Positions 4,462-10,400 of a DNA stretch of 64,000 nucleotides are shown piece after piece. The stretch comes from Lepidodermella squamata. Taxonomy: Eukaryota > Animalia > Gastrotricha. How positions within the stretch are numbered: the stretch's first letter is position 1; each line of letters begins with the position of its first letter. Below the pieces are notes generated by a model. It was given only the letters and a program-made list of their open reading frames with translations, was not told the origin of the DNA and made no database searches. The position numbers were made by a program, and so were the translations under genes. The stretch is taken from contig JBLDXI010000004.1 of assembly GCA_047495785.1 (NCBI GenBank), forward strand, positions 1,488,001-1,552,000. The letters are read 5' to 3'.

Positions 4462-7400
4462 ATGACTACTATCATCAGCTGCTTGTTCAAAGTTCTCTAT
4501 CTTTCAATTTATCTCGGTGTTTGTCATGGCCAATTTCAGCGTTGCTTTTCGCAATATAATGACGATTTCACGCGGTGCGTTGCGGCTAGCGATGGCTGCG
4601 ACCCTTTAACAGAATTTCCGGTAGAAATAGCCTAAAGTAGCTTCAATTTTCATTTTTTTCGGAATACTTTAGCACGGCAGAAATTTTAGAGCGCTCGACC
4701 TATGCCGAAGAGGGGTTTTTCAATAGATATTCAGCGAACCTTGACGGGTAATGATTTTATTTTTTAAAGAATGGACTGATGTGTTATCGATATGCGCTAC
4801 TAACGGTTTGGTGCCGACCAGCAGGGTTATCTTGCTATTCAAATGAAATTCCGGTATTTTCACCTGAGAGTCTTAAGAGTTTAGCAATTATTGGTAATAG
4901 ATACAAACATTCAACGGCCTCACACTGTTGCGAGCTAATTTACAAGCTTGCAAAAACGCAACTGCCAATTTTCCGGTATTTTGCTTCAATAATTTTCATT
5001 GAATATTTGCTAATGATTTGTGTTTGTAGGATCAGTTTTTCAAACGCTGCTATGCCAATCGAACTCTGGTGACTTGCGTACCGCGAGATACAACTTCATG
5101 TCCGCTAAACACGGTTTGCTATCCAACACATATCCCAGTTTGACCATGATTCACATGTTTAAGGTTGAGGGAGCCAATAAACGTAATTTAACGAGATGCG
5201 TCGATGGCAAAAGTGAGTTCTTTGCGAAAAACATTGGCTTTCTAACCATATGCCATTTTCCAGTTCAAATTCCCGAACGTGAACAGCCACATGTACGCTG
5301 CTTTCGATCAACCGACCGTAACTTTGTGGCTTGCCGCCCGGTTAGTTCTGGCTGCGTTAATGGAAATCAAACAAGCGCCTTCTCAGGCGGGCCTTTTCGA
5401 AACCTCGAAGCCTGTTCGAGAGGAGTGAGATAGTGAATCAGAGCCTCATATTTTAACAAATGTATCCATTCCAAGTTTGCCGTTGTATGTCGCGAGGGCA
5501 ACGCAAAAGTTTGCTACTACACCTGTCCGAGCAGATCAAGAGTAAAAATTCGTCGAAAACCGATTAACGATGTCACAAGAATTTGATTTCAGATAAAATT
5601 GTTCTTGGACTCGAATTCATTTGCTCAAAACTACGCTGATTGTCTATCAAATTTGCAAAAGGTAATTTTGTGAAATTCTTGGGTGATTCGTGGAGTGATT
5701 CACTCGTGGATTCGTGGATTTGTTATCTTTTTTTCTGACCAATTTTGAGTTAAAGGAGCCGAGTTTCATCCGCTGCTTGGCACCTCTTACCGGGGTCGTA
5801 GCCTGTCGATCAAATGTTACTGGATGCCAAGCTACTGAAACGCCCAATCTTGATAGGCTTTATCTGACGCATAGAGCGAAGTACTGCTAGGGATGGTAGG
5901 GATTATCCCTGCCAGTTCCATCGGTCCGCAAGGTGAGCTCAGACAAAGACCAAAGAGGGGACCCTTATGCTGATTTTTGTTCCGCGGTTCTACTTCGCTC
6001 TATGGTCTATGATTCGCACTATGGATCAAGAAATTTTCATAGTTGCGCCGGGTCCGTCTTGTCTTCGATTTCGCCATTTCCCTTGTTGGCGCTTGGTCGT
6101 CCATGATGTCGCCCATTACCGGCGCTTTGTCACTAATCAATTGAGTGGTTAAATGGTGACTTAATCGCATATGGGATGCTAAGCACCACAGTCATGCCAA
6201 TTTGCAAACAAGCTTATCGAGCAGGATCATGAAGATTTCAGCTACACTAACTACCTCGGCGATCATGGCTAGGCTCAGGAGGGAATGGAGGCTGTTTGTC
6301 GATGAATGAGGTCAAAACCAAAATTACAGCGTTTTGGACTCAAAAGCTAAGAACAACTCTCAGGCCAGCTGCCTAATCGCACTAGCAGTGGGCGACTTTA
6401 CATTAATGCCTAATAATAATAATACTTAAATTTTTTGCTATTGGATGTTCAAGAATAATATTTAAAAATTATAATTATTATTATATTTACCACTGGTGCT
6501 AACAAACAATTACTTCGCATCGTCCCCTACAACCAAGCTAATTTCGGATAGAATGTATGCTCAGTTGTCGACGAGTTAAAAATAAAACTGTCCATAAACA
6601 TCCTCAAGCTGCTCGATCATCCAAAGTTTCATCCAGTCATTCATCCGCTTTTCGTTTTAATTAAAATTGTCAATTAAAACCTTGGTTATGGCTTTCAGAC
6701 TGGCTGTTATCGCGGCGACATTAGGCATTGTCGTTAGTCGTAAGTTACCGTCTCTCTAATCCTTCCAAGGCTCATGTCGATTTCGTCTTTTCAGAAACAA
6801 CTGTCAGCCCTGCGAAGATTGTCGAATGCTCGACTGGAGTGAGCACGACCGACGCGTTCAATACCGACGGCATGCTGTACGATCTCAACTATCGGTATGT
6901 CTACTGCCCCGACGGCAGCTACCTGACCTCGTGGAAGCTCAAATTCACTCCGAATGCGTCTGCTTCGTCTGCCCAGTATGAATACAAGTGCTGCAAGGCG
7001 CCGTCTGTCGGAAAGTGCAGACAGGTTACGAACGACCTGACGGATGGTAATGGCTTTGCTGCTGTCTCCCTCGAAAAACAGGATATCAAGTGCAACGCGA
7101 ATGAGTTTCTGAAAGGCTTCCACCTGACCACATTGTGGAGTCAGATCAGGTTCAACTATGCATGCTGCCAGGTTAGTATCGAGATCGTGTACCAAATTTA
7201 CCTACGAGCTCGTGAGGTTCGACTGAAACAAGCGTGCGGTGAGATCCCCCACTTTGGGGGAGGTTTCTGATGGCCAAGGCCTAAGAGTCCAGGAAACGTT
7301 CAGATTATCAGGCGCCATCTCACCATCTCACATGTTTATTTTTCATTTCCAGATTGAAGGCGAATTCGATGTTATTCCCAGGGCGCTAACAACCGATTAC

Positions 7401-10400
7401 GACAAGGAAAGTAACAAAACGACGACCTTAGACCGCCACAATCTCGCCTGCGCGGACGGTGAGCTCATGCAGAGGTGGCACCTGCAACGCGATGTAGACC
7501 AGGGTATGGTGCGCTTTGAATACACATGCGCTAAAATCAATCTGCGTGAGTTGCAATCCGCACAAGACAGAAATTGAAATTGAAAAATATTGCTTCTATG
7601 TAGCTCCGAAGTGGTACGAGAAGTGCTCTAATGCCACCCTGAAAACCAGACTGGCCGATGACCCTGATGGCAAAACGTACCAGCTCAATTTGCAGACCGT
7701 GCAATGTCCCGAGAGGAACTATATCACTTCCTTCGGACTGGCCAGGCCTAGCGCAACCACCGTCCAGTACGCGTACACGTGTTGCGCTGCCCCCATGGTG
7801 CCGGTGTGCCGCGAAATCCAGAACGCTTGGACCCCTGGCTACTACGGCGACACCAACTTTCTGGACAGGCAAGCTGTCACATGCAAAGCTAACGAAGTCC
7901 TGAACCGATTTGTCCTAGTTACCGACCGGCTCACAATTGCCGAAGGTTCAATTACCTACTACTACACTTGCTGCTCGGTGCGAATTTCAGAATTCAAACT
8001 GCTACTGTTTTAATAAAATGTGTTTACAGGTCACAGGTAAGGTCACCACTACCAACCACGTGACTGATGAAATCGACCACAAGGGCAAAACGTTTGCTCT
8101 CGCCAACTACCGCCCGACCTGTCCCGACGGCAGGTTGCTGCAACAGTTTCAACTGAAGCGCGGTCCTGGCGGCAACCACCGATACGAGTACACCTGTGCT
8201 AAGGTCGAGGAGTGAATCGGACAAGAGGAGCAGGTTGCAGTTTAGTCGAGAAATTTATGGTAAATTATGGTTGAAGGGAATAAATCGTAATCATTCATTA
8301 CTCGAGGCGGTTGATAGTCAGCAGATTAATGATCAGCGTTGAATAAAATATAACAAGGCATAATGTGTGAACATTTTGATTCAGGAAGTCCTCCCATCTC
8401 GTGATTCCTAGTCACCCTCTTGTCTATCCTCTATTTATTCGTACAGTTCTGAGCTAGCTTTCGACGCACGGTTTATAAGATTTTTCGACCTCCCGAAAAC
8501 ATACAAGGGATATTACGAAAAATTCCGGGCACTTGGAGCGTTAACAGAAACTTTGATCAACACTATGTCTAGCACCACCTGCGAGGAAATACTTCCATAC
8601 CATGTTGCTAATCACCTAGATAGCGTGGCGAATGCTGTCCCCAATGTGAGTCATGAAATATAAAGTAACTGTACCTATTTATTGATTCTCATGATTCTGA
8701 TAATTGATCCTCATTTATTCAAAATATCTGTGAACGATCTAGGCCTAGTTTTTAAACATCCGAAAATTGGCCGAAAATTCTTCGTAAAAATAAAAAAAAA
8801 TACCACTCAGGGTGTATCTCAGGGAGCTCGAACTGACTGGGTTTGGTGTAATCATAAAATCCGACTCCCTTTAACGAATGAACGATATCCAATTGGAATA
8901 AATCTATGCCTCTGACTCAACGAGAATCTGAACTTTCGAAGAAGCTCAATAATTTTAACGTTAATGTGGAGCCAATGTTGTTGTTGTTTTGTATTGTCAA
9001 TATCAAAATGGACAAATGGAATTTGAACCGGACTGAATTTAACTCTGATTTTTCTGCCGGCTATGAGTGGATTGCCCGATTAACATTGTTGTGAGCGTTC
9101 GGCTAAAGCTCTTAAATAAAAGACTTAAGCTCTTAAATGAATGAATAAAAGCTTCCCTTATGTCGATTTTCCTTATCCCTATCAGTTCCGCGGTCCTACT
9201 TCGCTCTATGATCTGACGGAATCCGACTGTGTCGAGTCTTTCAGATATTTCGAGGTCAAGAAACGATACACAGTTGTGAACTCGGGCGTCAATTGGCAGA
9301 CAGCTCAGGACTTATGTTTAGCTAATTTGAGCCGTCTCGCTGTTATCAAAACCGAAGATGATCAGAACTCGCTGAGGCAACAACTTTACGCTCAATTGAT
9401 CGAATCAACCTGGATTGGGTTGATTTTCAACTCGACAGCTAGCGATTGGATGTGGGTGGATGGTTCGGTGTTCACGCCATCTTTCAACCTGCAATGGGGC
9501 CCAGGCGAGCCGAGTGGTAGCGGAACCCGTGTTCTATTCAATTTCGTCGCAGATAATTTCTACTTGAACGATTGGCCGTGCGATAATTCGACCGTGGCTG
9601 CTTATGCTTGCGAGAGCTATGCTGAGAATTACATTCCAGTAAGTGAATTTTCTCATTTGAAATGGAAACATCGAAAGCGAGTTAGACCTAGGAATATTTT
9701 TCTTTAAATTTCATAAAAATAATTTTGAAAAATTTGGAAAATCTTTTAAATAAAAGTAAAATTCTAAATTTGAATGTTTTGTAACTTTTCCACGAGATTT
9801 TCACGAGATTTTTTAAGCCTGGCTACGTTCGCTGTATTGCACCGAATGGAGTCGTGAATTGTCGCTCAAACGAAACAGGCTGTACCTCAATTGAGAATCA
9901 ATATCCAGTTGATGTCGAATTCCCAGACGAAGAGCGTTGCTTGAACCCCGCTAAACTGTTCACCGCCTACAACATCGCGTTGACATGGGGAGAAGCCCGC
10001 GAGTACTGCAACAATCACAGCCAGGAAATAGCTACTATCAAAACGATGGGCGAGCACTATGAAGTAATTCGGTTGCTGAGTAATCGATCAATCAACTCAG
10101 CTTGGGTTGGCTCTTATCGAAGCACTTTCTCCAATCTGTGGTTCTGGGTCGATAACAGCCGAGTTCTCGCCTTTCGTAATCAATGGGTTGAAAATGAGCC
10201 AAATGGAGGCGGAAATTGCGGAATTTACAGGTCAAGCAACGGCGTCTACCAAATGGCTGCGTCCTTCTGCTATTCCGTTCCAATTCAAGGCTTTGTATGC
10301 GAGAAGATTGCCGACAATGACGGAACACTCCAACTGCCGCAATATTTGACACCACATATTCGGTGTTTCAACTCGAGAAGCCGCGAATTTGTTGCCTGCC

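What the first reader, a model, noticed from the sequence alone, without database searches (positions are those of the whole stretch)
5862..9218. hAT-type transposon carrying a complete intron-containing gene, inserted in a lectin exon
Seen: 14-bp TIRs (5870-5883, 9197-9210) and a perfect 8-bp TSD ATCTGACG enclose 3341 bp with no transposase but a whole 5-exon gene, its upstream region and poly(A) signals. Removing the element and one TSD gives the continuous host frame ...ETPNLDRLYLT|ESDCVESFRYFEVKKRY..., which aligns with sister modules. A second right end at 5991-6004 makes a 135-bp mini-element at the left side. Established: 8-bp TSDs are typical of hAT; Pack-type elements usually carry gene fragments and are best known in plants. 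Inference: a composite transposition used the left end of a MITE and the right end of a downstream relative, moving the intervening intact gene. This looks like recent DNA-mediated gene duplication in an animal.
Basis: partly seen in the sequence, partly recalled or inferred. Interest (0 to 1): 0.85.

Follow-up and report, generated by a model that had tools for sequence, protein, structure and literature searches.

The report
Jumping DNA carrying a whole gene
A 3.3-kb cut-and-paste transposon with no transposase gene carries a complete, transcribed, selectively maintained gene for a secreted protein. It has jumped at least five times in this small animal genome, once into a lectin exon, so a short transposon has turned a host gene into a mobile, self-duplicating gene.

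Summary
Perfect 14-bp inverted ends lie at 5870-5883 and 9197-9210. A third end at 5991-6004 closes a 135-bp mini-element. A perfect 8-bp duplication, ATCTGACG, flanks the 3,341-bp insert.

The genome holds six copies from five independent insertions. Homology stops exactly at the ends. Four copies have perfect, different 8-bp duplications and a fifth has a 7/8 match. A paralogous lectin exon on another contig reads straight through the insertion point with one copy of the target, so the site was once empty.

The ends belong to a 148-bp MITE family with over 100 copies, 8-bp duplications and a CAGAG... terminus, which is typical of hAT. No transposase source was found.

The cargo is a 5-exon, roughly 393-codon gene from a native tandem gene family. 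It is intact in four copies, including this one. It is under purifying selection (dN/dS about 0.22, p = 5e-5). A cDNA assembly shows it spliced, but those transcripts match another copy's variant, not the window's.

The closest precedents are maize hAT macrotransposons, plant Pack-type elements and fungal ToxhAT. I found no animal example of a complete gene moved repeatedly this way. This is a new variant of a known kind. The scan has unchecked notes of other cargo-carrying transposons in this genome.

The parts
5750..5869 (+). Left part of the interrupted host C-type lectin exon. The start at 5750 is inferred from an AG acceptor.
   Evidence: The frame ...ETPNLDRLYLT ends at 5869. It aligns to the sister module and to the uninterrupted paralog L048.
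5862..5869 (.). Left copy of the 8-bp target-site duplication ATCTGACG
   Evidence: The paralog L048 has a single ATCTGACA at this point.
5870..6004 (+). 135-bp MITE forming the left end of the composite. Outer TIR 5870-5883, inner TIR 5991-6004.
   Evidence: It is 80-84% identical to the 148-bp family and carries a 13-bp deletion. It has no TSD of its own. This variant occurs only in the composite copies.
6005..6024 (+). Constant 8-mer GTCTATGA, perhaps a relic TSD of the MITE at the donor locus, followed by a degenerate second right-end motif at 6011-6024
   Evidence: It is identical in all composites that have the MITE. Copy L035 starts at 6013.
6494..6687 (+). Upstream and promoter region shared with non-mobile paralogs. 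The cDNA 5' end is at about 6639-6640.
   Evidence: Homology to the tandem-array paralogs starts at 6494. A template-switch adaptor sits directly before 6639 in an X2 contig (table 7).
6688..6739 (+). Cargo exon 1: ATG and a hydrophobic signal-like peptide
   Evidence: The joint 6739>6795 is present in cDNA.
6795..7171 (+). Cargo exon 2: two Cys-rich modules
   Evidence: joint 7171>7353, GT..AG.
7353..7545 (+). Cargo exon 3: one module
7604..7977 (+). Cargo exon 4: two modules. This is the part that was folded and searched.
   Evidence: (the contig starts at 7604, joint 7977>8030).
8030..8215 (+). Cargo exon 5, with the stop codon at 8213-8215
8279..8347 (+). Poly(A) signals AATAAA at 8279-8284 and 8342-8347
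   Evidence: Sequence. cDNA coverage ends in the bin 8169-8319 (table 2).
8700..9120 (.). Downstream carried DNA holding two unrelated dispersed repeats, at about 8700-8800 and 8946-9120
   Evidence: Many 87-96% identical copies lie on other contigs.
9153..9210 (+). Right end: the last 58 bp or so of a canonical MITE, with the TIR at 9197-9210
   Evidence: Alignment A1. Contigs of other MITE copies join about 5950-5961 to 9155 (table 5).
9211..9218 (.). Right copy of the TSD ATCTGACG
9219..9638 (+). Right part of the interrupted lectin exon, holding the C-type lectin domain
   Evidence: Pfam PF00059, E = 2.1e-10. 26% identity to the sister module at E = 6e-14. 87% nucleotide identity to the paralog L048.

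Best explanation
Window 5870-9210 is one copy of a non-autonomous, hAT-type cut-and-paste transposon. Its ends come from a 148-bp MITE family, and between them lies a complete host gene.

Shown: the unit of 135-bp MITE, about 3.15 kb of carried DNA and a 58-bp MITE right end has inserted at five or more different sites. Each time it is bounded exactly by the same ends, with an 8-bp target duplication. One insertion split a coding exon of a multi-domain C-type lectin gene. The carried gene brings its own upstream region, transcription start, four introns and poly(A) signal. It is transcribed and correctly spliced from at least one copy lineage. Its coding sequence evolves about five times more slowly at amino-acid-changing sites than at silent sites.

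Inferred: a hAT transposase supplied in trans binds the 14-bp ends and the subterminal TAGGGAT motifs, cuts out the whole cassette and reinserts it. Copy number rises as it does for other cut-and-paste elements, by transposition during replication or by repair from the sister copy. The cassette arose when a MITE upstream of the gene and the right end of a second MITE downstream were used together in a macrotransposition. That would also explain why no donor locus remains.

The cargo encodes a secreted protein of six Cys-rich beta modules from a native tandem gene family. Its function is unknown and it may be dermatopontin-like.
For: Ends and TSD are confirmed. There are six copies at 96.8-99.4% identity (aligned positions, gaps excluded), with homology starting at 5870 and ending at 9210. 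The distinct perfect TSDs are ATCTGACG, CTTCATTA, TTTTCGCC and CGTGGACC, plus the 7/8 pair ATTGTGGT/AATGTGGT. L033 is a segmental duplicate of L032, not a new insertion. An empty-site paralog exists.

For the MITE family: 161 candidate loci; 259 end matches at up to 1 mismatch against 24 for the control; about 18 of 25 copies have perfect 8-bp TSDs; the canonical left terminus is CAGAGAGCGAAGTA.

Short-read contigs bridge both junctions. Depth over the cargo is about 5 times the flank depth. The cargo ORF and all splice sites are intact in four copies. There are 17 synonymous against 13 non-synonymous changes, omega about 0.22, binomial p = 5e-5. Variable columns are 2.6% in coding against 6.6% in non-coding DNA, p = 2e-7. 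cDNA contigs carry a template-switch adaptor at 6639 and have three introns removed. Non-mobile paralogs at 70-76% identity share the gene layout and 194 bp of upstream DNA.
Against: No autonomous element with these ends was found. None of the 30 hAT dimerisation-domain hits lies within 25 kb of an exact end. The 20 best have no MITE-like end within 1.8 kb downstream. The composite's own ends read CATAG, which departs from the hAT YARNG rule at position 3. The TSDs show no clear nTnnnnAn preference. The spliced cDNA matches the L034/L036 variant at all 11 diagnostic sites, so expression of the window's own copy is not shown. No donor locus with the gene between two MITEs exists in the assembly, so the composite origin is reconstructed and not observed. 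Run X1 may be the same sample as the assembly, so its junction support may not be independent.
Confidence: 0.85

Rival explanations
1. The element belongs to another superfamily that makes 8-bp duplications, such as P, and is mobilised by that transposase instead of a hAT one.
For: The composite's ends begin CAT, like P-element ends (my own knowledge). Intact-looking P transposase frames of 413-473 aa exist in this genome. No hAT partner was found.
Against: The canonical family terminus is CAGAG, close to the termini of hobo, Hermes and Tol2 (the comparison is from memory). The TIRs are short at 14 bp, with subterminal short repeats. All six P-domain hits lie more than 30 kb from any exact end.
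Confidence: 0.1
2. The cassette did not arise from two MITEs used together. A single MITE acquired the gene internally through faulty gap repair or template switching after excision, as proposed for Pack-type elements and filler-DNA Ds elements.
For: The right end is only the last 58 bp of a MITE. A 566-bp family member on C33 is a MITE with about 400 bp of filler. A degenerate extra right-end motif sits at 6011-6024.
Against: The left unit is a complete MITE with both ends. Its own right end differs from the composite's right end by a 13-bp deletion and substitutions. That is expected for two separate elements. A gene lying between two MITEs, the raw material for a composite, is seen on C10.
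Confidence: 0.25
3. The copies arose by segmental duplication or are assembly artefacts, not by transposition.
For: One pair, L032 and L033, really is a segmental duplicate with identical flanks.
Against: The other copies have unrelated flanks. Their homology stops exactly at the TIR ends and each has its own TSD. Short-read contigs bridge both junctions here, and cargo depth is 5 times flank depth. The empty-site paralog has one copy of the target.
Confidence: 0.02

Closest known systems
Maize hAT macrotransposons: Ac/Ds pairs, and the Tam3L pair that moved Ccd1 to create the White Cap locus (bioRxiv 10.1101/082677)
   Same: The outer ends of two nearby hAT elements act together. Complete genes lying between them move. 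An 8-bp TSD flanks the whole unit, and the inner element lacks a TSD of its own.
   Different: The maize case is a plant with full-length 4.5-kb elements, one documented move of tens of kb, and later amplification by unequal crossing-over. Here the ends are a 135-bp MITE and a 58-bp end fragment. The unit is 3.3 kb. It has become a stable family with at least five transpositions, in an animal.
Pack-TYPE elements of plants: Pack-MULE, Pack-CACTA and others (PMC8903248)
   Same: They are non-autonomous TIR elements with host coding DNA between the ends, in multiple copies with TSDs.
   Different: Pack elements typically carry gene fragments, often chimeric and rarely functional. Here the cargo is one complete gene with its promoter and poly(A) signal, and it is under purifying selection.
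ToxhAT of fungal wheat pathogens (PMC6737239, PMC12506042)
   Same: It is a hAT-type element that carries a complete secreted-protein gene as cargo.
   Different: ToxhAT is 14 kb, fungal, and known mainly for horizontal transfer within a larger Starship. Here there is repeated amplification within one animal genome.
Bacterial composite transposons (IS-cargo-IS, such as Tn10 and Tn5), and the foldback-flanked giant TE of Drosophila that carries white and roughest (my own knowledge)
   Same: Two copies of a small mobile element bracket ordinary genes and mobilise them as one unit.
   Different: The transposase families and hosts differ. In bacteria the flanking IS elements encode the transposase. 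Here neither end encodes anything.
Turmoil-1 of C. elegans (PMC2572040)
   Same: It is an animal DNA transposon that has taken up host coding sequence.
   Different: Turmoil-1 took up only fragments, within its inverted repeats. That 2008 paper states that transduplication of protein-coding genes was unknown in animals.

Membership tests
hAT superfamily (non-autonomous member) | 8-bp target-site duplication | tested here: met
   Four composites have perfect 8-bp TSDs. About 18 of 25 MITE copies also have them. The empty-site paralog has one copy of the target.
hAT superfamily (non-autonomous member) | Short TIRs of 10-25 bp that begin 5'-YARNG | tested here: met
   The canonical family left end is CAGAGAGCGAAGTA: 136 exact CARAG-type sites against 2 for the control. 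The composite's own ends read CATAG, a one-base departure.
hAT superfamily (non-autonomous member) | An autonomous relative with the same ends that encodes a hAT transposase (RNase-H-like DDE plus the hATC dimerisation domain) | tested here: inconclusive
   There are 30 PF05699 hits, none within 25 kb of an exact end. The 20 best have no MITE-like end within 1.8 kb downstream. The search was not exhaustive.
hAT superfamily (non-autonomous member) | Weak target consensus nTnnnnAn | tested here: inconclusive
   In about 20 TSDs, T at position 2 and A at position 7 each occur in about a quarter, which is no clear enrichment.
MITE | Short, non-coding, with TIRs and TSDs, high copy number and homogeneous copies | tested here: met
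   The unit is 148 bp. There are 161 candidate loci, and depth is 60-90 times single copy.
Macrotransposon / composite transposon | The unit is bounded by the outer ends of two separate elements, and the inner element has no TSD of its own | tested here: met
   The left MITE is complete. Its flanks do not match (the variable TSD against the constant GTCTATGA). The right end differs from the left MITE's own right end.
Macrotransposon / composite transposon | A donor locus with the gene between two independently inserted elements | tested here: not met
   Window 6005-6493 and 8216-8700 occur only inside the six element copies. This is expected if the founding event was cut-and-paste, so it does not count against the mechanism.
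Pack-TYPE element | The cargo consists of captured gene fragments | tested here: not met
   The cargo is a complete five-exon gene with a promoter and poly(A) signal.
C-type lectin (host gene) | Match to Pfam Lectin_C above the curated cut-off | tested here: met
   PF00059 scores 41.7 bits against a cut-off of 22.6, E = 2.1e-10, on 9219-9629.
Dermatopontin (DERM, PF14704), considered for the cargo protein | Match to the Pfam DERM profile | tested here: not met
   No DERM hit at E <= 1 on any exon. There is only a language-model lead (score 0.95) and partial model similarity (TM 0.51-0.60).

The most novel reading that the evidence does not exclude
A MITE pair has turned an ordinary animal gene into a lasting mobile gene. 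The cassette keeps transposing, each new copy is a self-contained expression unit, and selection keeps the protein intact. A cut-and-paste transposon is therefore expanding a host gene family by DNA-level retro-free duplication. I could find this mode documented for plants and fungi but not for animals. Together with other unchecked notes of cargo-bearing transposons in this genome, it may reflect a general property of this lineage.
Probability: 0.5. Interest if true: 0.8.

Novelty: new variant of a known kind. Interest (0 to 1): 0.68.

Why it matters
In animals, gene duplication is usually put down to unequal crossing-over, segmental duplication or retroposition. Cut-and-paste transposons are thought to carry at most gene fragments.

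Here a complete intron-containing gene, with its own promoter, has been copied to at least five unlinked sites by a 135-bp MITE and a 58-bp end fragment. It is still under purifying selection and is transcribed. This gives a clean natural example for three questions: how short transposon ends can mobilise several kb of host DNA, how new dispersed paralogs arise with their regulation intact, and what that costs, since one copy destroyed a lectin exon.

It also offers small, naturally validated ends for a hAT-type vector, if the transposase can be identified.

Tried and rejected
1. Autonomous partner. I intersected all exact end sites (68 CATAG-type, 136 CARAG-type, of which the first 100 were listed) with 30 hAT dimerisation-domain hits and 6 P-element hits. 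None lies closer than about 25 kb. I fetched 1.8 kb downstream of the 20 best hAT hits and found only chance-level matches at 3 mismatches.

2. A 2,774-bp pair of ends on C11 has no TSD and no ORF longer than 103 aa.

3. I fetched the three truncated-looking Piwi loci and found no such element.

4. Donor locus. No donor locus was found. The nearest non-mobile paralogs are only 70-76% identical.

5. Empty-site allele. The listed joints show no 5869>9219 joint, and the junction contigs run on without branching.

6. Cargo identity. Pfam finds nothing on any exon. Foldseek against the PDB gives a best E of 0.1, to the PCSK9 C-terminal domain. VIA-align wide gives a best Z of 4.3.

Smaller requests worked.

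Full report
**The observation.** CATAGAGCGAAGTA lies at 5870-5883, and its reverse complement lies at 5991-6004 and 9197-9210. ATCTGACG lies immediately outside both outer ends, at 5862-5869 and 9211-9218. The insert is 3,341 bp and has no long ORF and no transposase domain. 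The three exact end matches compare with a shuffle mean of 0.42 at up to 2 mismatches. A perfect 8-bp repeat in exact register has a chance of about 1.5e-5.

**It is a mobile unit, not a one-off.** A search of the whole 121-Mb assembly with the cargo part found five more copies. After alignment they are 96.8-99.4% identical to the window copy, counted over aligned positions with gaps excluded. In pairwise alignments, homology begins at 5870 and ends at 9210. Each locus has its own perfect 8-bp duplication:
- window: ATCTGACG
- L032, contig C66: CTTCATTA
- L034, contig C54: TTTTCGCC
- L036, contig C29: CGTGGACC

L033 is a segmental duplicate of the L032 locus 80 kb away. Its flanks are identical, and a later 243-bp deletion removed its right end.

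L035 (C30) lacks the left MITE and the next 8 bp, yet it is flanked in register by ATTGTGGT and AATGTGGT. I read this as a fifth insertion that later lost its mini-element, by excision or by deletion. That step is inference.

The copies fall into three lineages: {window, L032, L033}, {L034, L036} and L035. They are about 97% identical between lineages and about 99% within. The cassette has therefore moved over an extended period, and recently.

**The site was once empty.** The left flank has one other match in the genome, on C64. There the paralogous lectin exon runs without interruption through ...LDRLYLTESDCVESF... and carries a single ATCTGACA at the junction. The window's left flank ends at L048:1869, with base 1870 left unaligned, and its right flank starts at L048:1871. 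The two halves of the window's exon also align to adjacent parts of the sister module downstream. The right half carries a C-type lectin domain (PF00059, E = 2.1e-10). Reading from the exon into the element meets a stop at 5888-5890, so this lectin module is broken.

**Independent read support.** In run X1, contigs cover 5300-5902 and 9182-9800 without a single difference, so they bridge both junctions. Flank depth is 61-66, cargo depth about 300-340, and MITE depth 4,000-5,600. This agrees with five or six cargo copies and many MITEs. No joint from 5869 to 9219 was listed, and the junction contigs do not branch, so there is no sign of an empty allele in that sample. X1 may be the sample the assembly was made from.

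**The ends.** The 135-bp unit at 5870-6004 belongs to a MITE family. The family has 161 candidate loci and 259 end matches at up to 1 mismatch, against 24 for the control. The canonical copy is 148 bp. Its left end is CAGAGAGCGAAGTA and its right end is the reverse complement of CATAGAGCGAAGTA. It carries TAGGGAT motifs near both ends, and most copies have perfect, different 8-bp TSDs.

The composite's left MITE is a 135-bp variant with a 13-bp deletion, found only inside the composites. It has no TSD of its own: its left flank is the composite's variable TSD and its right flank is always GTCTATGA. The composite's right end, 9153-9210, is the last 58 bp of a canonical MITE and includes the 13 bp that the left unit lacks.

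This anatomy is what a macrotransposition predicts, in which the outer ends of two separate elements are used together. An origin by internal acquisition within one MITE is not excluded. A 566-bp family member with filler DNA exists. So does a gene sitting between two MITEs without a composite TSD.

**Superfamily.** An 8-bp TSD, short TIRs and a CAGAG terminus fit hAT. From memory, the termini of hobo, Hermes and Tol2 begin CAGAG. I could not find the transposase source. None of the 30 hAT dimerisation-domain hits is near an end site, and the 20 best have no MITE-like end downstream. The six P-element hits are also far from any end. The hAT assignment is therefore well supported but not proven.

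**The cargo.** The gene model is:

| Exon | Coordinates |
|---|---|
| 1 | 6688-6739 |
| 2 | 6795-7171 |
| 3 | 7353-7545 |
| 4 | 7604-7977 |
| 5 | 8030-8215 |

All splice sites are GT/AG, and the model is about 393 codons long. The frame and every splice site are intact in the window copy, L032, L034 and L035. L036 has a 5-bp deletion in exon 1, and L033 has a 2-bp deletion in exon 5.

Across the copies there are 17 synonymous and 13 non-synonymous changes, giving omega of about 0.22 (binomial p = 5e-5). Coding columns vary at 2.6% against 6.6% for the rest of the element (p = 2e-7). Pairwise silent divergence of 3-4.6% matches non-coding divergence. The protein has therefore been kept by selection while it travelled.

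Run X2 is a cDNA assembly. One contig carries a template-switch adaptor directly before 6639. Contigs join 6739 to 6795, 7171 to 7353 and 7977 to 8030, one contig begins at 7604, and coverage stops by about 8320, just after the AATAAA at 8279-8284. At all 11 diagnostic sites these transcripts carry the L034/L036 variant, and they lack L036's deletion. Expression is therefore shown for that lineage, not for the window's own copy.

**Origin of the cargo.** Paralogs at 70-76% nucleotide identity sit in tandem arrays on C18, C106, C54 and other contigs. They share the exon layout and 194 bp of upstream sequence, so the cargo comes from a native gene family. The rest of the carried DNA, 6005-6493 and 8216-8700, occurs only inside the element copies. 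That is expected if the founding move was cut-and-paste and emptied the donor site.

**What the cargo encodes.** The protein has a hydrophobic N-terminus followed by six Cys-rich modules with the recurring pattern ..LDR..V.C......F.L.R....Y.Y.CC. Pfam finds nothing. The nearest representatives in a 1.8-billion-protein library are only about 33% identical and come from a dinoflagellate transcriptome and from metagenomes. An AlphaFold model of the exon-4 module pair is confident (pLDDT 85.6) and all-beta. It has no solved counterpart: Foldseek E is 0.1 or worse and the best Z is 4.3. It matches predicted giant-virus proteins at TM 0.79-0.82 and dermatopontin-domain proteins at TM 0.5-0.6. A language-model search also pointed to DERM. 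My commitment, at low confidence, is a secreted binding or matrix protein that is distantly dermatopontin-like.

Exons were searched and folded singly, by reference.

**Comparison with what is known.** The mechanism matches hAT macrotransposition in maize, where a Tam3L pair moved Ccd1 and its neighbours once (10.1101/082677). It resembles Pack-type capture in plants, which involves fragments (PMC8903248), and ToxhAT in fungi (PMC6737239). For animals, the 2008 Turmoil-1 paper states that transduplication of coding genes was unknown (PMC2572040). My literature searches turned up Helitron captures and giant composite elements, but no MITE-bounded complete gene that transposes repeatedly. The library is incomplete, so this absence is weak evidence.

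Earlier unchecked notes of this scan report other cargo-bearing transposons in the same genome: a hAT with spliced micro-genes, a hAT-like element with a tRNA block, and a Transib-like element with a kleisin gene. I did not test them.

**Verdict.** It is strengthened by the evidence for repeated transposition, selection on the cargo, and an empty-site paralog. Three things remain open: the transposase source, the exact founding event, and the function of the cargo.

Noticed in passing
L035 (G000:C30:386058-392149), locus positions 1493-1500 and 4662-4669: This copy starts at window-equivalent 6013, so it lacks the 135-bp MITE and the constant 8-mer. It is still flanked in register by ATTGTGGT and AATGTGGT (7/8). 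The mini-element may have excised on its own, leaving the cargo gene immobile.
   Followed up: partly
window 8700-8800 and 8946-9120: Two stretches in the element's 3' part are separate dispersed repeats, with many 87-96% identical copies on other contigs. L036 lacks the stretch 8720-8837.
   Followed up: partly
window 8567-8647: This reads as an ATG followed by 27 codons and a GTGAGT donor. It may be the first exon of the neighbouring gene at the lost donor locus, carried along with the cargo.
   Followed up: no
L071 (G000:C10:1608480-1610700): A 230-aa open frame for a Cys-rich, signal-peptide-like protein lies between two MITE copies of the same family. There is no composite TSD. This is the arrangement from which a composite could arise.
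   Followed up: partly
L070 (G000:C33:705260-705880): A 566-bp member of the family consists of MITE ends around about 400 bp of unrelated filler, with an imperfect TSD.
   Followed up: partly
G000:C63:195981-209064 (L017-L020): Four MITE copies lie exactly 4,312 bp apart and share the same TSD, AATCCTTA. This is one insertion that was then amplified as part of a tandem repeat.
   Followed up: no
L032 and L033 (G000:C66:434705-440822 and 514295-520243): A segmental duplication 80 kb apart carries the element twice. The second copy has a 243-bp deletion of its right end and a 2-bp frameshift in cargo exon 5.
   Followed up: yes
G000:C46:546802-550046 and G000:C66:466188-473494: A hAT dimerisation-domain hit and a P-element transposase hit lie 3-7 kb apart on two different contigs. 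This suggests a repeated unit containing both.
   Followed up: no
window 7606-7977 (cargo exon 4): The cargo's module fold matches predicted proteins of giant viruses (Nucleocytoviricota) at TM 0.79-0.82. Its nearest sequence relatives, at about 33% identity, are from a dinoflagellate transcriptome and from metagenomes. No Pfam family covers it.
   Followed up: partly
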